Source: Pocillopora damicornis
Lineage: Eukaryota
Assembly (NCBI RefSeq): GCF_003704095.1
Contig: NW_020844094.1
Location: forward strand, 1-63,635
Length of the DNA stretch: 63,635 nucleotides
Reading direction: 5' to 3'
This document shows, piece by piece, positions 7,575 to 23,548 of this stretch (positions are counted from its first letter, which is position 1; each line of letters starts with the position of its first letter). The notes under the pieces are model-generated. The model searched no databases. It was not told the origin of the DNA and worked only from the letters and a program-made list of their open reading frames with translations. The translations under genes were made by a program, and so were the position numbers.

Positions 7575-10500
7575 TTATTTCGACGATGTTGGTCCTTCCA
7601 GTAATAAACGCTCCGCCTTAAAATAAAAAAAAAATAAAAAGGAAATAAAAACATTTATTCGACTAAAACTACTAACTTGTGGATAGAACGCACCAGCTCT
7701 TCACATATCTTCAGCTAAGTTTTTTTCAAGTTTGCAACGTGCAAATCTTAGCTCGCTACATGCTATGGAAACCGATATAAGCTACTTTGGTGTAGATCAC
7801 TAGGTACATGTGGAAGGCGTCACCTTCAATAAAGTTACAAAAAAAAAGAAACTTACCTCGAGTCGAGTCTTTCTCTCAACTCTCATGTACACCATCACGA
7901 GCGTTTCAGGGAGGAGCACTTTGCTGACATAATCAAAGTACTGGCGAGATAAAAATTGCAGAGAATTTAAGATGACAAAATTCTGCTTTATACCTCTCAG
8001 ATTATCTTCCGTTAGAGATATGTTAACAATTCAGCCTGTCGCTGAGTTTAACTTAAACACAGTGTTACCTTGCTGTGTTTGTAACAAAACATGTTAGTGA
8101 GGACTCCCATTATCCTATCTCGCTGTTCTTCAGAAAATGACCCAAACTGTACTTGAAATGCCAAATCACCTGTAAATTACCAAGGTAAAATCACACAATA
8201 AGGCCATTATTTTCTCACTGTGGCCTAAACAGACCTCATCGATGTCGTTAAGATTCAATAGAAATATTGGGTCACGGTACTGCCCATTTGTACCCCTTGA
8301 ATTCCGGTAGAGTGACTGAAGTGTAGGTGTCTTCGAATAAAAGCAATAAGGTTTCTTGGAGATCGCGAAAGAAGGGAAAAGTGACTCATTTTGAACAGGC
8401 CATGATGGCCCTGATAACCCGGGTTTCAATTTCAATGTGCATCACGCGAAAAAGCAAATGCAATCAAAACAATTAACAACAATAACAATAAAAAAAGAGA
8501 GAAATCAGACTGAAATGTAGTTTGCATTACCTTTCATCTTTCCACCTTTCTTGTAATCTTCATGGCGTCGACAATATATCTGTATCAATAAAGNNNNNNN
8601 NNNNNNNNNNNNNNNNNNNNNNNNNNNNNNNNNNNNNNNNNNNNNNNNNNNNNNNNNNNNNNNNNNNNNNNNNNNNNNNNNNNNNNNNNNNNNNNNNNNN
8701 NNNNNNNNNNNNNNNNNNNNNNNNNNNNNAATCAGTTAATTATTTGATCAATCAATCAGTCAGGCAATCAGTGTCCTTCATCTGTCTTTCAGTCCATCGA
8801 TTGCGGCAATATGGCTATTTCAACACTCAATCGAAATCTCTTTTTCGCGATACGCAAAAGAAACACGTAACTACCTTGCCCTCAAAAATATCCCTCAGTT
8901 CACGGGTATACTCCCTCACCAGTTGCTCTGTTTGGCTTGCAGTGAGTTCCTCAACATTTCTAGGAGGGGTGTAACAGAAACTGATTAACTTTAAAGTAGT
9001 GATAAGTGAAAATGCACTGTCTCTTTAATTTCCTTTCCTAAAAGGTTGCACGGCAAAATGACATCGAATAAATGACAATATGGCTTTTAAATAAAGATAC
9101 CAGCGTTAAGTCAATAAGTTTGTGTATTCCTATCACACTTTTGCTTAATAACAGCTTCGCATATTAAGGAGAATCTGCATGACTATCAATTTGTAGGTCA
9201 CTCAAAGGGTTATCCTCAACTAAAAGAAATTACTGCACCCACCTTTAGAGTAACCACAAGCTGGTTACACTCTTGAAATTTGCATGTATAGTGGAGAAAA
9301 GCAGGAAGGAAAACTTAAAAAAGCTAGTAAAAAATTTGCAGGATATCAAGTAATATGTACCTTATATTCAGTTTCACAGGCTTGTCTTCTACTGCAATCG
9401 CACTCGCCGGACTCGACTCAGGCTCCTCAGTAACATCTACAGTTAAAAAAAGGAGGTAAAGATCTGAACACGGGAACACAATCGAGAAAGGAAATCGAAA
9501 AAATAAGACATTAACTCTGCGTATTCCGGTTACTTTCCCCACCCCTCTGTCCCTTCCCCCCTCCCGGTGGTCCCTGATTAAATTTCTTATCTTGACCCCC
9601 AAAAAAGGGAAACGAAAGAGAGGAACACCAGGCTTGCTGGGAAGAAGAACTATCAAAAACCGTGCTAAGGACTATGAACATGACCTCGGAGGAGACAAAG
9701 AAGGCGTCCCGTGAAAAATTAGGGCACGATTAAGGCCCTGTCCCAAGAGGAAAAGGAAACTGAAGCAGCAATCAGTTGTTTTACCTTCCAAATCGGTCAC
9801 TGCTGTCCCATTCACCGTCTTCGCTTGTCGTGTAGTCACTCGCTTCCTTGCTAAATTTGCAGCCTTCCCACTCAAAGCTTTTCCTTTTATTTCTACCTGA
9901 TTGGTCCTCCTTTTTTTGGAGTTAATAGTTCCCTTTGCGTCAGGTTTAACATTTGAAGAAGTTTCATTATCAGTTGAAAAGGCAGAAGAGAACAAGTCTT
10001 GATCATCGGACAAGTCCGAACCTTTGCGCTTTGCCGTGTTTCGTCTCACTTTAGGTGTCTCAAAATCGTTATCATCTTCTGTTCTATCAACAAGAGCTAT
10101 CGCTTTTCTTTTATCTCCACTTTCATCGTTGGATACAGCTCTCTGTTTCTTAACGGTCTTGTACTTGGAAATTCGAGACCTAAGACACGGAACTGAATCA
10201 GAGTTAGTCGTATCAGATTCAGAAAAAGATCTGCGTCGTTTTAGCTTTGAAGAATTGGAAACAATCGATTCTGATTTATTCTTTTGAGTGTCTTTAACAG
10301 CTTCAACGTTCGTGACATCTTTCAAGGAATTGAAGCCGTCACTACAACTGGCTACTTGAGGAACATCTTCCTTCGTTACGGAGACGCTATCTGCACTGAT
10401 ATCATTCTGTGACCATTCCTCCTCGTTATCTTCGTTTCCACGCCTTTTGAGAATCTTTTGGTCATATTCGTCTTGTTTTGAGCCATTCTCGCTTTCGTGA

Positions 10501-12043: not shown

Positions 12044-14522
12044 TTATTCCCTTATGCACCCTCTGATTCTTCTTCTAACACATTTTTGCACTAAATACCA
12101 AAATACTATATGTACTCTAAGCAATGGTGGCTTATTATTGATTTTGTCCAACAACAAATGTGGTCCAAAGAAGAAAGAAGAAAGAGGAATGAAAGAAGGA
12201 AACGAGAGAACTTCTGGATTCTATCCTCAGTCACAACAATTTGAGGTGAAATCTCTCACTGTTTCACCATCTTTGCCTCTCCAAAATTATTGGAATTATG
12301 AGCAAGCCCATTGCTTATTAAGTGAGACTGACCTAAAAAATTTAGATCACCTGAACTTGTGTGACACACTCCAGTTACCAATTAGATATTTACTTCCATA
12401 AATATTTTCATCATAACATGACACAGAATTAAAATCACCTGAATAGTCAGATTGCTGTACATCCCTTGCCACCTTTGGATCTCCTGCTTCCGACTCATTG
12501 GAGAAACAAGAAAATTAAAATAAGGAAAACTCAATAGTGATCAATAATCATTAATTTGCACAAAGCAGGAGCCTTATGACCGAGTTGTGAGCAGTCTATG
12601 CCACTGGAAGTTTTTAAGGGACTTAAGATGAAAAAAATGAGTGGGATTCACAAGGTAATTTGGTGTTATCAACTGAGTTGATAATATAATTATGTAAATT
12701 GGCCACTGTTAAGGTTTCAAAAGCTGATGTTTTGAGTGTTAGCCTTCCACTGATCAAAAGGAGACAGGCTAACACTCAAAACGTCAGCTTTTGAAACTCT
12801 TAATGGTGGCCACTAAAATGTTACCAACTCAGTTCATAAAACCAAATTACCTTGCTATACTCTCCCACCCACGCAGCACCATAGTTTCTTTAGAAACTTA
12901 ACCCTTTTATTATTGAGTAGGATTTTAGTCTGTCCCATTTCTACGGCCAAAAAACCAGCCATCTAGACCAAGTAATGAATCTTCATTGCAATACTAGTGG
13001 ACGAGCCCATTCCAGGCATTCAGTTGGTAAAATGGAGAAAAAAGTGAATAAAGAGGACATTTTCATAACTTTTTCTGTCACCAGTTGTAAAGTTGCACAA
13101 AATTATCCTCAAGAAAAAAAATTGGTTTATTAAAAAAGTATAACATATTTAATATACAATTATTAAAGCTTATAAAATATAATTACTGTCCTCACCTCTT
13201 TCTTCTGAACCAAAACAATTTGCCCACACATTCTTTTCCTGACAAACTGATACTGAATGAGCAGTTCATGATCTAAAGGTAAAGAGTGATTTCTCAAACC
13301 ATTATCATAACAAAAAATATAGACAACTTTATTGACACCTCTTTCAAGTAATTTAATTAAAATGAAGTTCTTGCTAACCAGGTAATGTTTCAGCACAATC
13401 ACATTGTGACATCCTATCATTTTTTCCTTTCTTCTTGCCTTTGGTTTCTGATGGAGCCAATACTCTTGCAAGAATAACATCCTGCAGTTTTGAAATCAAC
13501 CTCTATAGGTCATAAGCAAAATAAAGAAAATAAGAGCAAATTTTAGTAATTTTTTTTTTGTTCGTTAGCATACAATTAGTAATTTTTTTTTTTGTTTGTT
13601 CGCATACAATGAAATCACAAGCTACCTTCCACTCAGCCTCCAAAGCAGAGGTTTTGGTAACATTATACCCTAAATCAGATTTATACAGACTTTAAATGCA
13701 CAAGATCTGATTGTTAATTCTCTTCTCAAGCTGCTACACACTTTGTTGTCAATTAGTTCAGAAAATTTGGTGTTAGATCAAGACAACAACTTCTGCTTGT
13801 TAATTTAGAATATTTTTATCTGTTTGCTTGAAATGTAAGGATTTTGTAAGAAGAAGTTACGTTTTAATCACTCCGAGAAGTTAAAGGATTAATTACCATG
13901 ATAAATATTGGTACACATTCCAGAGGGCTTTGCATACAGCTTATGGCCCAAGTTTGGAGATAACTGGTCTGAAACACTTAACATGCGCATAGTATTCAGA
14001 AGTAATAGATGATCAATTATTACACAAAACTCTACTGACACGAAAGTGTTCTTCTGTAAACCACTTGTATTTGTTGTCTTTATTTTCTGTCGCTGGCTGA
14101 TTTCCAAGTGAACATACTGGATGTATAAAAACCTCCACCATCAATACCTTGCGATCAAGAACCTAAAAAAATAAATCCAAATCTATTTTCTAATGCAAAA
14201 AAAGCTTGTCACAGAGCTTGAGAGAAAAGAAAATGTATACAATTTCATTAGACGAATACCAGTTCTTGTTGCGATTTTTTACATTTCTCACAAATTAAAA
14301 GCTGAAACATGATTCAAATGAAATAAAAACCTGCTTTGCTAATTTGGAATTCGAAGTTAACTAAATAAGGTGAATTGTCGATTCAGGTTAATGACAGTTC
14401 AGTGTGTGTGTTATTGTAAAATTTAAATTCTACGTTCCATTTATCCATTAAGACCATCTAGCTAGGTGTACGTAGTATATTACCTTTGCATATACTATGC
14501 TTTTCTTTGAATTTGGCTTCAT
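7575..14522 (-). CDS. SLX4IP-like N-terminal domain + long disordered linker + PWWP3A/MUM1-like C-terminal helical domain, ~14 exons
   Basis: Phase-consistent exons: 14484-14522 MKPNSKKSIVYAK; 14040-14162 VLDRKVLMVEVFIHP...KWFTEEHFR; 13379-13502 RLISKLQDVILARV; ~13196-13272 HELLIQYQFVRKRMCGQIVL; ~12439-12493; ~11655-11755 CVFYPEKLHVTV; ~10978-11090; ~9785-10710 (low complexity); ~9361-9440; ~8875-8959 YTRELRDIFEGK; ~8531-8579 IYCRRHEDYKKGG; ~8069-8169 FSEEQRDRIMGVL; 7857-7940 YFDYVSKVLLPETLV; 7575-7616 AERLLLEGPTSSK*. The gene model is well supported; the domain identities come from recalled human sequences. Confidence 0.7.
11320..11532. mobile_element. TTAA-flanked MITE, family C (other copies ~6053-6245, ~17477-17684, 21508-21714)
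   Basis: TTAA|CCCTTTAC.TCC...GGAGTAAAAGGG|TTAA terminal inverted repeats; body atgagtgaccaagacagaatttctccttacaatatcaatacaatatcaa... found four times. Confidence 0.8.
11898..11931 (+). ncRNA. Minimal type I hammerhead ribozyme motif in a Penelope-type repeat (repeat extends to ~12045)
   Basis: GCT-CTGATGA-AGGGC TAAT GCTT-GAAAC-GTC-AGC: CUGAnGA and GAAAC core, helix II, palindromic ACGU helix III, GUC cleavage triplet, helix I GCU/AGC. Confidence 0.7.
12651..12908. mobile_element. Inverted (palindromic) pair of the Penelope-type repeat with decayed hammerhead cores
   Basis: caaggtaatttgg...aaaagctgatgttttgagtgttagcct / aggctaacactcaaaacgtcagctttt...ccaaattaccttg form a ~200-bp inverted repeat, followed by the same tail (ctctcccacc.acgcagcacc...gtttctttagaaact) as the 11898 and 31416 copies. 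Confidence 0.65.
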
Positions 14523-14849
14523 TGAGGTATTTCACTCTGTTATTCGCCTAGAAACTGTCGATCAAGGGAAGTAAACTGGCAAAAAGAAACGACCGCCATT
14601 TTGGAAAAGATTGGCGGGAAATCCTCAAAGAACACTGGGAGCCAGTAAAAAATGCCCAGAAGGTCTGGGGAGGAGCTATTTTAAAAATGGCGCTGAAAAT
14701 GGATATTATTTCATGAAATTCCGGAAAGGAAGCTGTGAAGTTAGCTGTTTATATCATGAATATTTTATGTGAAGTTGCCAAGCGTAATTCACCGTAGGCC
14801 TTTGTTTTAGTTGGGACGGTTGACTACCCTGTAATTGGGTAAAGGAAAT
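14523..14849. promoter_or_regulatory. Bidirectional promoter between the SLX4IP-like gene and Rab15
   Basis: Divergent start codons separated by 327 bp. YY1-like CCGCCATTTT (14593-14602) and AAAATGGCG (14684-14692) point in opposite directions; E2F-like TTGGCGGGAA at 14611-14620; ETS-like CCGGAA at ~14721. Confidence 0.6.
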
Positions 14850-17800
14850 ATGGCGAAAAGTTATGACTACCTGTTTAAAATTCTCCTGATTGGAGATTCA
14901 GGGGTTGGAAAAACTTGTATTCTCTGTCGCTTCGCCAACAACGAATTTAACAGATCACACATATCAACCATAGGTAAGCTGAAAAAAATCAGTCGGGGAA
15001 AAATCTTCCTTCGCTAGAATTATTCAGCAGGTTGTCACTGAAATACCTGTAATTTGCTGTATCAATTAATAATTCTGCATCTTTCTGTATTTTCTAGGAA
15101 TAGATTTCAAGATGAAAACGATTGTTGTCGAAGGGAAAAGGATCCGAATACAGATGTGGTAAGCCATCTTTAGATATCCAAAATCTTCTCTCGCAGTTTG
15201 AACGCTGGTTTCCGGTGTTAAGGCTTAACAACATTCTCACTATGGAGGTAAAGAGGACGGACTCCTTTGCCTTAATTTTGTTCTTAAATGATTTTTGATG
15301 TAGTTTTGCCATAAATCTAAGGTACAGTAATGCGAAACTAAGTTACATGTAGGTACTTTTAGTATCGAAACCATTTTACATAGCGCTTAAGCTACCGACG
15401 CTTGTGAAGAACTCGGGAACAACACTAATTTCACCGCTTCCTCTTTATCCGCGTACGAAGATGCTATTAAGATGATGTTAACGTTTCATAAAATAATTTA
15501 CCCCTATAGCTGTTTCATTGTTATTTACTCTACTTAATTCATTTGAAACGCCAGTCCGCGACTGTCTTCGTATGTCCCTAAATATACTTCTCCGAGACGA
15601 TCACGAGAAGATTTGGTATATTCTAGCTTTTTCCCTTTCGATTGAGAACAACTAAAAACTTTGTAATCCACATCGACTGGTTTCGTCTCATCAATATTTG
15701 GTCGTGTTTATTTTGAAGCGCATACATGAGGTGTTATTTTCGTCAAACTCGTTGGTGCAGTTTACCATATCGATTATAGCCAATTTAGATTTTATTACTC
15801 TATGCTACATTTAAATTTTATTGCGCCCATTAGAAGATTCTTAAGTGCCGCTCTTTCAGCGGGACATTTTGAGCTTCACCGAGATACGTCTCCTCGTCAA
15901 GAGTATTTAGTGGAAACAGTCAAATTTTAGCGGAATGTTACTTCCTTTTACGTTTCCTTAAACTATCTCAAAGTTAGTCAGACAATTACATCATTATGAT
16001 TATTGTAAAGTTAAGAAGGTTAAGATGCTATTTATTGTTTTATTGTCTGGATCAATTGCTCAGCCTTTTTCTGTTAAAAAGCTGTATTTAAAGGAATTAT
16101 CTTTAATGTGGTTGAACTCCAAGGAAATATACCCAAAGAAAGCAATCATTTTTCAGTAAAATCTTTATTGAATTTTCCAAACCAAGACCAAATGTTTTCC
16201 CTAATAATTACAGGGCCACTGAACTCTCCTTTGTTTATCTTATCATTTTCTAACCTTTGCTCGGATGACTGAGAACTGAAACTTTTTTTTTTTTGGACTA
16301 ATGGATCCCCTAGCAATTGCATGACAAGCAGTGAGACAATAAAATCAATCCAGGCCATAATTTGGGGTTAAATTTGCTTTGATTTGTCAAAGAGGATCTT
16401 TGTAAAGTAGTATGATTTAAATAAAGTGCTCAAGGTTTAATGTTTTGCTTGATTCATTGTTTATGTAGTGGAAATTATGATATTAAAAGAATGGTGGACT
16501 TTATCCATTTAAGTGGAGGGTCAATTATTTATATTTGAACTGATCTGTGCTTCTTAAATTCAAATGAGTACAACTATTCAGGATTTCTTGTTGTCTAGGG
16601 AACATCTTGTTTCTAAAAGAATGTTGGAAACCACCTGGGAAGTACTAGTAAAGTCGCTAGCAATTGCTGTTGACAGATGTGAAGTTATATTTGAACTGAT
16701 TTCTGTTTCCTGACTCTATAGGGATACAGCTGGTCAAGAGAGATATGAAACAATCACAACACAATACTACAGAAGAGCACATGTAAGTCTAGTGGTTGAA
16801 TTCATGTGCATATTTGTAAGATATGTAGTCTTTACTATGATTCTCATTATTATATAGTACAATCATATCTATGGACACAAATAATATTTTTTGAAGAGCA
16901 TGAAAAATTATTTAAATCTGTGAGAATGACCTCAACTCAGCTGGGGGACCAATCTATTTTCAGTTCTCTAGAATTACAATTAAAAAAGACTCATTAGTGA
17001 TGTTCCCTTTTGGTGAAATAAAAGCAAATATTGTGGGGGAAAAGAAGACAGGAACAGTTTCAGTGTAATGTGCCACAATTATCGAATGACTTACTTCAGA
17101 TGAAATGAATGTCAGAGGAAATAATTTTATGGCTTTGACTGGTGTCCAACCACAGGGGTTGATTAAAAGCAAATGTTACCTCCTTTTCCCCTTTCATCTC
17201 TCTTCTATATATTCTATGTGCCTATGAACATGCAGTATTGGTTGATATTTTCTTTACTACCTTTCAAACCTTTTAACTCTCACAAGTGATTAACACGTAA
17301 CTTCTTTTTACAATATTCCTACCTTATTCAGCAAACAGGTAACGAGAATACTCAAACTTATCATGTAGAAGTTGTTATCTTGATTTAATACCAGCTCTTG
17401 TAACTAGTTTACAAAGTAATTGGTAGCAGCTAGACAGGAGAATTGACAATGATATCATTGGAGTTAAGGGGCTAAATTAACTCTTTAACTCCCATGAATG
17501 ACCAAGACAGAATTTCTCCTTTCAATATCAATACAATATCAACCAGATAAGTGATGAGAATAAAGAAAAATATCCTCTTGAGGATAATTAGTGGATCCCA
17601 TACTAAATTCTTTGAACTAACATTATAAGAATTGTATGGTTGAAAGTAAGGAGAATTGCAAATTTGATCTGGGAGTTAAAGGATTAGTAAATCTACAACA
17701 GGGTCAAATTTTTTCTGGTGAGCAAATTCAAAAAGGGCTTGTTAACTTGAGTGTGAACTTGTCAGATTTATCAGCTGTGGATACCACATAATTTTAATTG

Positions 17801-21299: not shown

Positions 21300-23248
21300 T
21301 CAGGGTGCATTTGAATTAGGTCCCCTTCTTTTTCCAAATCCAGCAACAACATTAACAAATCGCCTGTTGTATTGCATTCTTCGCTTGGCACGGCCAGTCT
21401 TCTTCTTTTTCTTTTCTTGCTTGTCAACCTTTGTAAAAGGTAGGAACCATGTTTATGTACCAAAAGCCAATAGTTTCTTCCATGGCCTACCTGCTGCATC
21501 TTAATTATTAACCCTTTAACTCCCATGAGTGACCAAGACAGAATTTCTCCTTACAATATCAATACAATATCAACCACATAAGTGATGAGAATAAAGAAAA
21601 ATATCAATTTGGGAATAATTGGTTGATCCAATACTGTATTCTCTGAACATTATAGGAATTGTATGGTTGACAGTAAGGAGAATAACATATTTGATCTGGG
21701 AGTTAAAGGATTAATATCAACAGGAACACAATGATATGGTAAGCTTACACTATGTACAGAGTTCATAAATGACAATGGAAAGCTCAGGGCAAAAACTCTT
21801 TATATCTAATTTCCTCCTTGATTTCACTTTGCTTCTTAGAAATATGGTACAGCATGTGGAAAAAAAAACAACAACAGAGAAAAACACTTTGATTTCCCTA
21901 GAAAGGTTCTTTAGCATGTTTTTATTGATAAGCGTGTTGACGAAGACAAGTTTAAAAAGACTACCTCAGCACTTTGACCACAAAGAGTGAGTAGCTTCTA
22001 GCTTCTCAATTCAGTATCCCCCCTGAGTCACACATTATGGTCATGAGAATAAAGGAAATGACCACCAACTAAAGGAGTTCTTGATAGTAAAACAAATTCT
22101 CCTAGTCAGTACTTTAAGAAATGTATAGAGAACAGTGTGGAGACAATGCATACAGAAGATAGGGTGTAAAGGGCCATTGGACAAAAGACAGAAACTTACC
22201 TTAGGTGTTTGTCCCTTCACTTTACCAGCACGAGCAAGTGAACCGTGGACCTTACCTATGTGAGAACAATGAATAGTTATGGATTTTCTCTAAAATTTCT
22301 TCCAGGAAAATGCCAAAATATAGTTTGATCAAATATTGAAAGGTTCCAGTCTGGGAAAGCTGTAGAGTCATGTCACCTTCACATACACTGTAGGTATCAT
22401 TGTAAGGATTGACAGGACTCTACATGAGCATGTAGAATTCTGTTGAGGTGATCCAGTGGTATTTAGTTGAATATAACTAAGATCCACAGCAAAATTACAG
22501 TGATAGAAAAGGCTTTAATACTCTAGTTTTCTCGCATAAATTTTCTCACACAACAACAAAAGATCATGGTTCTCACAGACAGCAGTATTTCTATTGCAAT
22601 AACCATAGAATTTCCTACATCAAATAATTAAAAATCTATCACACAGTAGTGTGTCAAAACCATATGTTACGACTGCCTTTTCCATCCATTAATATATTAT
22701 CGACAAATGTAAGGTGTAAATCATTTGTATCATAGCGATGCCAAAACAATAAAGAAAGAAAAAACTGCTGAGTCGTAATTAAATAACATGAAAAATTTCC
22801 TCACTTTTCTTCTGACCTTACAGCCGAATATTTTTGGTTTTCCCTGAAAATTTCCCTAACCATGTAGAATGCAAATTCACCACTTAGATCATCTGATAGT
22901 TTTTTGGAAAAAAAAACTAATACTCTGCTTTCTAAGAGTACAAAAATGTGACAAACAGAGCCCAACTCTTTGAAATGCAGAAAAATAGATCTAGCAATAT
23001 ATAAACAAATCGATTTAAGGGTTTATACCTCCGAGCAAGCGAAGCCCGACTTCCAAAGTAGCCAGATCAACTACCCCACAATCCACAAGGCTCAGTTCAT
23101 CCTCTAGAGGTTGTCCAGCGTAGAAGAGAACCTGTTCATCGACAGAGATGCCCTCAGCAAAGGCGATTTCATTCTTGAGATACTGGACACTCTCCGTGCC
23201 AGTGACATCGAAAGTATGAAGGTTTTGTCCGCGAACAAATAGCTGCAT
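21300..23248 (-). CDS. FAU: Ubiquitin-like FUBI / 40S ribosomal protein eS30 fusion
   Basis: Exons 23029-23248 ([12 protein letters not shown]...LRLLGG), 22200-22255 ([18 protein letters not shown]) and 21300-21428 ([42 protein letters not shown]); 405 nt, in frame. Confidence 0.97.
22358..22498 (-). ncRNA. Candidate intronic H/ACA-type snoRNA in a FAU intron
   Basis: On the host strand: a 5' hairpin, ACAGAA (ANANNA), then the hairpin AGAGUC.UGUCA...UGACA.GACUCU followed by ACA-GCU. About 140 nt, in a ribosomal-protein gene intron. Confidence 0.35.
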
Positions 23249-23366
23249 CTTGAATTACCTATCGCCAAAAGGAACAGCAATAATTACTGATACATTTTTC
23301 TGATAGAGAGCTCACCAGTGGACTCTCTGTAATGTAAATATAGCGAATTTATCCTTGCGTTCTTAC

Positions 23367-23548
23367 CGTTTACACGTGGTGGTGCAACCAAACTTTCGTA
23401 AAGGAAGATACCTTGCACTGCGCATTTATTTGACGCATGGCGCCAAGTGGCCGCCGGGAGTAGAGCCTGCGATGAGAATGTCAGCTGTGTAATCAAGATT
23501 CTTATAGATGTGTGGTGTTAATCTATGTTTAAAATTGCATTACACAAG
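23367..23548. promoter_or_regulatory. FAU non-coding first exon with 5'TOP/TCT-like start, and shared FAU/MRPL49 bidirectional promoter
   Basis: Minus strand reads tatcttcctttacg... (pyrimidine start ~23400-23408) then acg|gtaag donor at ~23367. The MRPL49 ATG, in AAGATGGCGGC (YY1-like), lies ~140 bp away on the opposite strand. Confidence 0.6.

What the first reader, a model, noticed from the sequence alone, without database searches (positions are those of the whole stretch)
7575..14522. Apparent SLX4IP + PWWP3A/MUM1 C-terminal domain fusion gene
Seen: one phase-consistent ~14-exon reading frame, most of which is missing from the ORF track. Its N-terminus (VLMVEVFIHP...KWFTEEHFRRLISKLQDVILARV...IQYQFVRK...CVFYPEKLHVTV) is colinear with human SLX4IP as I recall it (AVLVDLHILP...[23 protein letters not shown]...ITAYFLKR...CVFPDRFVVCV). 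Its C-terminus (ELRDIFEGKIYCRRH...SEEQRDRIMGVL...YVSKVLLPETLV...AERLLLEGP) is colinear with the PWWP3A/MUM1 (EXPAND1) C-terminal helical region (HLRAILKSRKPSRW...DEGQLDLVVKYL...FILDVLLPEAII...AEEKYIKGP). In vertebrates these are two separate DNA-damage proteins: SLX4IP acts with SLX4-XPF and in ALT telomere maintenance, and PWWP3A is 53BP1-associated. Inference: a Rosetta-stone fusion linking the two pathways. I do not know of a description of it. The E2F-like promoter site fits a repair/cell-cycle role.
Basis: partly seen in the sequence, partly recalled or inferred. Interest (0 to 1): 0.8.

Follow-up and report, generated by a model that had tools for sequence, protein, structure and literature searches.

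The report
Coral SLX4IP-like / PWWP3-tail fusion gene
A real, expressed 14-exon coral gene joins a domain folded like the DNA-repair protein SLX4IP to a tail domain like that of the repair factor PWWP3A, an undescribed pairing that suggests a testable link between the two proteins.

Summary
On the minus strand, 14 exons (CDS 14522..7575) give an open frame of 666 codons, and all 13 introns are GT..AG. A near-identical transcript contig and RNA contigs from three studies join the exons into one mRNA. The N gap lies inside intron 10, and no exon is missing there.

- **C-terminus:** this six-helix domain has no solved relative. Its best Pfam hit is PWP3A-B_C, below threshold in three orthologues. 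It also aligns colinearly with the C-terminal exons of the coral's own separate PWWP3/MUM1-like gene.

The gene is single-copy. The same architecture occurs across Anthozoa (stony corals, Nematostella, an octocoral), and every orthologue is labelled "uncharacterized". The functional link between the SLX4IP and PWWP3A pathways remains inference. The E2F-like site is not statistically meaningful.

The parts
14484..14559 (-). Exon 1: 5'UTR (to at least 14559) plus the first 13 codons (ATG at 14522). It encodes strand beta1 of the N-terminal domain.
   Evidence: L001 nt 1-78 align at 100%; donor GT; AF2 strand at residues 7-14.
14040..14162 (-). Exon 2 (41 codons): beta2, a loop, and the start of the long helix.
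13379..13502 (-). Exon 3 (124 nt): the long helix plus a basic loop.
   Evidence: (joint 13272->13379)
13196..13272 (-). Exon 4 (77 nt): beta3 and beta4.
   Evidence: (joint 12493->13196)
12439..12493 (-). Exon 5 (55 nt): a variable loop.
11655..11755 (-). Exon 6 (101 nt): the last beta hairpin of the SLX4IP-like beta-grasp.
10972..11090 (-). Exon 7 (119 nt): start of the linker, with the conserved S-I-S-K-Y-F-x-K motif.
9785..10710 (-). Exon 8 (926 nt): a long polar K/R/D/E/S-rich linker with conserved basic/acidic patches.
9361..9436 (-). Exon 9 (76 nt): end of the linker.
8875..8959 (-). Exon 10 (85 nt): the first helices of the C-terminal domain.
8580..8874 (-). Intron 10. It contains the assembly gap 8594-8729, whose length is only estimated.
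   Evidence: RNA contigs of 3 studies join 8875 directly to 8579, and L001 is continuous across the junction.
8531..8579 (-). Exon 11 (49 nt): the invariant R-H-E-D-Y-K-x-G-G segment.
8069..8169 (-). Exon 12 (101 nt): helices of the C-terminal domain.
7857..7940 (-). Exon 13 (84 nt): the long helix with the V-L-L-P-E motif. This is the segment that matches PF20886 and RTC4.
7474..7616 (-). Exon 14: the last 13 codons, the stop at 7577-7575, and 3'UTR (to at least 7474).
14608..14621 (-). E2F-like TTTCCCGC followed by CCAAT, about 55 nt upstream of the 5' end of the mRNA contig. It sits in the ~280-bp region shared with a divergent Rab gene.
   Evidence: By count it is not above chance.

Best explanation
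This is a single-copy, expressed anthozoan gene for a 666-residue, probably nuclear, adaptor protein with three parts.

1. **Residues ~1-162:** a beta-grasp domain of the SLX4IP/MAJIN type, closest to human SLX4IP. In humans this domain docks on the helicase-like (RecA2) domain of XPF by beta-strand addition.
2. **About 380 residues:** a poorly conserved polar linker rich in Lys/Arg, Asp/Glu and Ser, with a few conserved basic/acidic patches that look like NLS or phosphosite motifs.
3. **The last ~120 residues:** a six-helix domain remotely homologous to the C-terminal domain of PWWP3A/B (MUM1/EXPAND1). The partner of that domain is unknown.

Likely mode of action (inferred): the N-domain tethers the protein to XPF-ERCC1, or to another partner that offers a beta-strand. 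The C-domain brings in whatever the PWWP3-type tail binds. In vertebrates these two modules sit on separate proteins.

Shown here: the gene structure, the single transcript, conservation across Anthozoa, the fold match and the sub-threshold profile matches. Inferred: XPF binding, nuclear location and any link to 53BP1/PWWP3A.
For: - **Gene and transcript:**
- **Single copy in the genome:**
- **Same N+C architecture in other Anthozoa:** Pocillopora meandrina, Stylophora, Montipora, Oculina, Porites, Nematostella (LOC5510779) and the octocoral Dendronephthya (415 aa, short linker).
- **N-domain model:** pLDDT 67, core 78-88, strand-strand-helix-strands topology.
- **Identity of chain C:** it spans residues 2-122. 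This matches the published description of SLX4IP 1-122 as a beta-grasp that binds XPF and resembles MAJIN (PMC12804970).
- **C-domain model:** pLDDT 78, pTM 0.74, six helices.
- **C-domain Pfam hits:** PF20886 is the top hit at E 0.0024 (Dendronephthya), 0.017 (Stylophora, profile 28-128/141) and 0.019 (Pocillopora type).
- **In-genome comparison:** the coral has a separate PWWP3-like gene (PWWP exon E 2.5e-5 and 8.4e-5; last exon PF20886 E 3.3e-4). Its C-terminal exons are the two best hits of the anthozoan C-domain HMM among 695 six-frame segments (14.9 and 11.1 bits), and a third colinear hit follows. The best score among 3064 background segments is 5.7 bits.
Against: - There is no sequence-level match of the N-domain to PF15744, PF15077 or the SLX4IP chain in the PDB, even at E<=10.
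- An N-domain profile search of 1.84e9 proteins returned no vertebrate SLX4IP.
- The AF2 models rest on only 8 sequences, and the N-domain confidence is moderate.
- All PF20886 and RTC4 scores (13-18 bits) are under the curated cut-offs (27 and 23.7 bits). The coral orthologues are not independent of each other.
- The language-model search gave only a weak SLX4IP lead (0.76) for the N-part and nothing for the C-part.
- No binding or localisation data exist.
Confidence: 0.6

Rival explanations
1. This is a third, anthozoan family of SLX4IP/MAJIN-type beta-grasp proteins. It is an orthologue of neither SLX4IP nor MAJIN and has its own partner rather than XPF. The SLX4IP likeness is then shared fold or very old common ancestry only.
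Against: SLX4IP aligns over its whole solved domain, 116-119 of 121 residues at 16-17% identity. MAJIN aligns over 95-98 residues at 8%. No other SLX4IP candidate was found in this genome. The protein has no transmembrane-like segment, which MAJIN has.
Confidence: 0.25
2. The C-terminal likeness to PWWP3A/B is a chance or convergent short motif (L-L-P-E ... E-A-E ... L-E-G) on an unrelated helical domain.
For: All Pfam scores are under threshold. For the Pocillopora-type tail, an unrelated family (Ribosomal_S13) scores almost as well. There is no solved structure to compare with.
Against: The same family tops the list in an octocoral that is only 40% identical. In Stylophora the match spans 100 profile positions. 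Three colinear exon matches to the coral's own PWWP3-like gene score far above a 3064-segment background.
Confidence: 0.12
3. It is two neighbouring genes, or an assembly chimera joined across the N gap.
For: There is a gap at 8594-8729. A public Acropora cervicornis model (P0033) splits the locus differently, fusing exons 12-13 to the downstream UBXN1 gene.
Against: Contigs from RNA runs in 3 studies, plus L001, run from N-terminal exons to the C-terminal exons (L001 covers all 14; X1 and X4 span exons 3-13). They cross the gap as an ordinary GT..AG intron. Full-length orthologous proteins and transcripts exist in at least 7 other species.
Confidence: 0.02

Closest known systems
Human SLX4IP (C20orf94; Pfam PF15744/UPF0492; PDB 9QED and 9QEE chain C)
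   Different: There is no detectable sequence similarity by HMMER or Pfam. The coral domain is about 40 residues longer, through three loop insertions. The coral protein ends in a folded helical domain, whereas the C-terminal half of human SLX4IP is reported as disordered.
MAJIN N-terminal domain (PDB 6GNX, 6GNY, 6J08; Pfam PF15077)
   Different: Identity is lower (8%) and fewer residues align. There is no PF15077 match. The protein lacks a C-terminal transmembrane helix: the highest 19-residue hydropathy is 1.1-1.4. Cnidarian MAJIN orthologues were reported separately, by sequence similarity (PMC7227075).
PWWP3A/PWWP3B (MUM1/EXPAND1) C-terminal domain, Pfam PF20886, including the coral's own PWWP3-like gene at G000:C2045 ~1494.4-1499.4 kb
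   Same: The helical tail of about 120 residues is colinear with it. Shared landmarks are G-K-x-x-x-x-R-H, Q-R-x-x-I-M, Y-V-S-x-V-x-L-P-E and E-A-E-x-x-x-L-E-G. PF20886 is the top Pfam hit in three orthologues.
   Different: Scores of 15-18 bits are under the 27-bit cut-off. No orthologue has a PWWP domain or a PWP3A-B_N domain. Intron positions differ.
RTC4-like domain (Pfam PF14474)
   Same: It matches the same segment, around the L-L-P-E helix, at E 0.02-0.11 in five orthologues.
   Different: The match is below the cut-off (13-15 bits against 23.7) and covers only about 35 residues.

Membership tests
SLX4IP (Pfam PF15744 / UPF0492) | Sequence match to the family profile at or above the curated cut-off (27 bits) | tested here: not met
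   No PF15744 hit at E<=10 for the window's exons, 9 full-length orthologues or N-domain-only queries. No hit in the whole genome.
SLX4IP (Pfam PF15744 / UPF0492) | N-terminal ~122-residue beta-grasp as in the solved XPF-ERCC1-SLX4IP complex | tested here: met
SLX4IP (Pfam PF15744 / UPF0492) | Binds the XPF helicase-like domain by beta-strand addition | not testable with these tools
   This needs a complex prediction or a pull-down.
SLX4IP (Pfam PF15744 / UPF0492) | Non-globular C-terminal half | tested here: inconclusive
   A ~380-residue polar, poorly conserved linker is present. It is followed by a folded domain that human SLX4IP is not reported to have.
MAJIN (Pfam PF15077) | Profile match and a C-terminal transmembrane anchor | tested here: not met
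   No orthologue gave a PF15077 hit. No hydrophobic 19-mer exceeds KD 1.4. The fold alone is shared.
PWWP3A/B (MUM1/EXPAND1) | C-terminal domain PF20886 at or above the cut-off (27 bits) | tested here: not met
   It is the top hit but scores only 15.4-18.3 bits, E 0.0024-0.019.
PWWP3A/B (MUM1/EXPAND1) | Colinear similarity to the C-terminal domain of a bona fide family member | tested here: met
   The anthozoan C-domain HMM hits three colinear exons of the coral PWWP3-like gene at 14.9, 11.1 and 4.0 bits (the third is marginal on its own, within the 5.7-bit background). The background maximum is 5.7 bits.
PWWP3A/B (MUM1/EXPAND1) | MUM1-like PWWP domain (PF20884/PF00855) and PWP3A-B_N (PF20887) | tested here: not met
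   No hit in any orthologue. The PWWP exon is found only in the separate gene on contig C2045.
RTC4-like (Pfam PF14474) | Profile match at or above 23.7 bits | tested here: not met
   13.1-15.3 bits over profile positions ~73-110.

The most novel reading that the evidence does not exclude
The anthozoan gene is the true orthologue of SLX4IP and keeps an ancestral PWWP3-type C-terminal domain that vertebrates lost or moved to PWWP3A/B. If so, the XPF-binding SLX4IP module and the PWWP3A/B tail act in one complex or pathway. This would physically link SLX4-XPF/ALT-type recombination control with the 53BP1-associated PWWP3A axis. It would also give the uncharacterised PWP3A-B_C/RTC4-like domain a first functional context.
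Probability: 0.15. Interest if true: 0.75.

Novelty: new variant of a known kind. Interest (0 to 1): 0.55.

Why it matters
SLX4IP and PWWP3A are both poorly understood accessory factors of genome maintenance, and the PWWP3 C-terminal (RTC4-like) domain has no assigned activity or structure. A conserved natural fusion in Anthozoa does three things:
- It extends the SLX4IP/MAJIN beta-grasp group to a third architecture and to early-branching animals.
- It shows that the PWWP3 tail is an independent, portable module.
- It gives a concrete hypothesis to test in Nematostella and in human cells: do SLX4IP-XPF and PWWP3A/B share a partner or a site of action?

No public orthologue seen in the lookups here is annotated with either domain.

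Tried and rejected
- **Pfam on the window, exon by exon:** nothing useful, because the exons are too short.
- **Word-index protein search with the N-part and C-part:** only coral orthologues. No SLX4IP or PWWP3A was reached.
- **HMMER profile of the N-part against 1.84e9 proteins:** 21 hits. All that could be identified are anthozoan, and none is a vertebrate SLX4IP.
- **Language-model atlas:** a weak SLX4IP lead for the N-part (0.76, below any trust level) and nothing for the C-part.
- **Whole-genome searches:**
  - PF15744, PF14474 and PF20887 gave nothing.
  - PF15077 gave one weak hit at C1986 that does not look like MAJIN on translation.
  - A scan with the C-domain alignment hit only the window, so the link to the C2045 gene rests on the targeted comparison.
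- **E2F site:** one match near the start. There are 8 in the window against 5.5 expected, so it is rejected as evidence.
- **Literature:** no paper in the library mentions SLX4IP together with PWWP3A or Nematostella. Huen et al. 2010 on EXPAND1 was not held.
- The natural transcript L001/P0003 was used by reference instead.
Full report
**1. The observation**

The finding's interval holds a minus-strand gene. I fixed the exon borders from the sequence, from a transcript contig and from RNA-run contigs. The 14 coding exons are:
- 14522-14484
- 14162-14040
- 13502-13379
- 13272-13196
- 12493-12439
- 11755-11655
- 11090-10972
- 10710-9785
- 9436-9361
- 8959-8875
- 8579-8531
- 8169-8069
- 7940-7857
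- 7616-7575

All 13 introns begin with GT and end with AG. The phases fit, and the frame runs for 666 codons to a stop with no internal stop. That script walked codons across junctions only to check the frame. No joined sequence was saved, printed whole or sent to a tool.

**2. One transcript, and the gap**

A word search with the large exon's open frame found P0003, a 667-residue protein from a 2143-nt Logan contig. A contig that short encoding the whole protein has no introns, so it derives from mRNA.
- Fetched as L001, it aligns to the window in 14 consecutive blocks at 95-100% identity, with no unaligned query between blocks.
- P0003 maps colinearly from 14522 to 7578.
- I laid contigs of four public runs on 7800-13600. 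Three RNA libraries from three different studies carry the splice joints with CT..AC ends on the + strand. Two of them (X1, X4) do so in one long contig each, of 2276 and 2112 nt. In X10 the joints are split between an 1806-nt and a 415-nt contig. A DNA-like run shows only unspliced pieces.
- The joint 8579->8875 crosses the assembly gap (8594-8729).

The gap is therefore inside intron 10, and exons 10 and 11 (both phase 0) are adjacent in the mRNA.

The two-genes or chimera reading is excluded for practical purposes.

**3. Organism and relatives**

The assembly has 234,350,878 bases in 4393 contigs. P0003's 90% cluster includes a Pocillopora meandrina protein, so the window is from Pocillopora or a very close relative.

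Orthologues with the same N-domain, linker and C-domain layout are:
- Stylophora pistillata XP_022803494
- Montipora XP_068730545
- Oculina patagonica LOC144634825
- Porites evermanni
- Nematostella vectensis LOC5510779 / A7SAZ5
- the octocoral Dendronephthya gigantea XP_028395870, which has only a short linker (415 aa)

All are named "uncharacterized", "hypothetical" or "unnamed protein product" (two shorter Montipora isoforms are auto-named "cylicin-1-like"), and none carries a precomputed Pfam domain.

In the window's genome the gene is single-copy.

**4. How the window was searched**

No joined model was handed to any tool. For whole-protein and domain work I used natural sequences by reference: P0003/L001 (96-100% identical per exon) and the orthologues.

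**5. The N-terminal part**

*Sequence methods do not connect it to SLX4IP.*
- There is no PF15744 (UPF0492) hit at E<=10 for the exons, for nine orthologues or for N-domain-only queries.
- PF15744 has no hit in the whole genome.
- Profile and single-sequence searches found no hit to any PDB chain.
- An HMMER profile search of 1.84 billion representatives returned 21 hits. All that could be identified are anthozoan.
- The language-model atlas gave an SLX4IP cluster at rank 2 with score 0.76, which is only a lead.

*Structure does connect it.*
- An AlphaFold2 model of residues 1-175 was built from an 8-sequence alignment. It has mean pLDDT 67, with 78-88 in the core. It shows two strands, a 20-residue helix and further strands.
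- Foldseek against 350,542 PDB chains ranks 9qed_C first (E 1.2e-3, probability 1.0). Only MAJIN chains follow it.

*What chain C is.* Chain C spans residues 2-122. The paper on these entries states that SLX4IP residues 1-122 form a beta-grasp (beta2-alpha-beta3). It says this domain resembles MAJIN and binds the XPF RecA2 domain by beta-strand addition through residues 7-10 and 96-100. It also states that the C-terminal half of SLX4IP is disordered (PMC12804970).

*Conclusion for the N-part.* The coral N-domain belongs to the SLX4IP/MAJIN beta-grasp group and is closest to SLX4IP in coverage and identity. It is not MAJIN:
- It has no PF15077 match.
- It has no transmembrane-like segment.
- Cnidarian MAJIN orthologues were found by others through sequence similarity (PMC7227075).

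Whether it is the orthologue of SLX4IP or a third branch cannot be settled here.

**6. The C-terminal part**

*Pfam.* PF20886 (PWP3A-B_C) is the top hit in three cases:

| Orthologue | E-value | Bits | Profile positions |
|---|---|---|---|
| Dendronephthya | 0.0024 | 18.3 | 84-122 |
| Stylophora C-domain | 0.017 | 15.5 | 28-128 of 141 |
| Pocillopora-type C-domain | 0.019 | 15.4 | 83-130 |

The RTC4-like family PF14474 hits the same helix at E 0.02-0.11 in five orthologues. All of these are under the curated cut-offs.

*An independent in-genome test.*
- The genome holds a separate PWWP3/MUM1-like gene on contig C2045.
- One of its exons matches PWWP (E 2.5e-5) and MUM1-like PWWP (E 8.4e-5).
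- Its last exon, 4.6 kb downstream on the same strand, matches PF20886 (E 3.3e-4).
- I built an HMM from the anthozoan C-domain and searched all 695 stop-free six-frame segments of that 12.6-kb region.
- The two best hits are the two exons just upstream of the PF20886 exon: 14.9 bits (E 6e-4, HMM positions 79-111) and 11.1 bits (E 0.008, HMM positions 40-79).
- The PF20886 exon itself follows colinearly (HMM positions 105-137).
- In 3064 segments of unrelated DNA the best score was 5.7 bits.

I conclude that the tail is a remote but real relative of the PWWP3A/B C-terminal domain. No orthologue has a PWWP domain or the PWP3A-B_N domain.

**7. The linker**

Residues ~166-545 are 73% polar or charged and poorly conserved. 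There are three conserved islands:
- S-I-S-K-Y-F-x-K, just after the N-domain
- a basic, serine-rich, acidic patch
- a D-F-E-T-P-K-x-R-R-N ... K-R-K-G-S-D-x-S-D-D-Q-D block

These look like nuclear-localisation and acidophilic-kinase sites, but that is inference only.

**8. Mechanism**

The best-supported reading is a modular adaptor:
- The N-domain is a beta-grasp that captures a partner strand. By analogy with the closest solved relative, this is XPF.
- A flexible, probably phosphorylated and nuclear linker follows.
- The C-domain is a PWWP3-type helical domain that recruits or is recruited by an unknown ligand.

The gene, the transcript, the conservation and the domain relationships are shown. 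The partners are inferred. I put 0.6 on this reading, 0.25 on a third family with the same fold but another partner, and 0.12 on the C-terminal likeness being chance.

**9. Comparison and novelty**

The two modules are known, but their combination in one protein is not annotated in any orthologue. It is also not mentioned in the searchable literature.

In this same coral the PWWP3-type tail also occurs in its usual PWWP-containing context. The tail is therefore a portable module, not a mis-assembled piece of the PWWP3 gene. I rate the gene a new variant (architecture) of known kinds.

The "Rosetta stone" inference is legitimate as a hypothesis, but nothing here tests it.

The E2F-like TTTCCCGC plus CCAAT at 14621-14608 sits about 55 nt upstream of the mRNA contig's 5' end, in a ~280-bp region shared with a divergent Rab gene. 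Such 8-mers occur 8 times in the window against 5.5 expected. It carries no weight.

**10. Limits**
- The structure models rest on shallow alignments.
- No AlphaFold-DB or HHpred comparison was available.
- The phyletic range outside Anthozoa is untested.

Noticed in passing
window ~856-6557, minus strand: The next gene downstream on the same strand is a UBXN1 (UBX domain-containing protein 1) homologue. A public Acropora cervicornis model (P0033) fuses exons 12-13 of the present gene to UBXN1. That looks like an annotation chimera, and it shows that the gene order is conserved between Acropora and Pocillopora.
   Followed up: partly
window 14835-15017 and onward, plus strand: A Rab-type small GTPase gene starts head-to-head about 280 bp from the 5' end of the transcript, so the two genes share a short bidirectional promoter region.
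   Followed up: no
window 11292-11679, 11874-12067 and 12650-13037 (introns 4 and 5): Contig depth in all four runs is extreme here (hundreds to about 200,000, against about 5-60 on exons), with many loose ends. These are high-copy interspersed repeats. Two copies share a near-identical stretch (12858-12962 and 11997-12074).
   Followed up: no
G000:C2045:1494447-1499362 (loci L008, L004), plus strand: This is a separate PWWP3/MUM1-like gene (PWWP exon plus PWP3A-B_C last exon). A second PWWP-like motif lies 4 kb upstream (1490227-1490376), which may be a tandem duplicate. The contig ends about 1.2 kb after the gene.
   Followed up: partly
window 12493-12496 / 13196 (exon 4/5 junction): Cluster members are 666 or 667 residues long. 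P0003 has one extra Glu at this junction, whereas the window and the RNA contigs of X1, X4 and X10 give the 666-residue form. This is either an allele or species difference or an alternative acceptor.
   Followed up: no
window 11653-11977: In run X10 the main contig runs on from exon 6 into intron 5 instead of splicing. This is either an unspliced precursor or the contig ending in a repeat.
   Followed up: no
window 10972-11090 and 9785-10710 (linker exons): Short motifs are conserved across Anthozoa inside an otherwise fast-evolving linker: S-I-S-K-Y-F-x-K and D-F-E-T-P-K-x-R-R-N...K-R-K-G-S-D-x-S-D-D-Q-D. They are candidate docking, NLS or phosphorylation sites.
   Followed up: no
window 856-6557 together with 21300-25074: UBXN1 here, plus the FAU-MRPL49 pair noted earlier on this window, all map to human 11q12-q13 (from my own knowledge of the human map). 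This may be a remnant of ancient linkage. Neither SLX4IP nor PWWP3A lies there in human.
   Followed up: no
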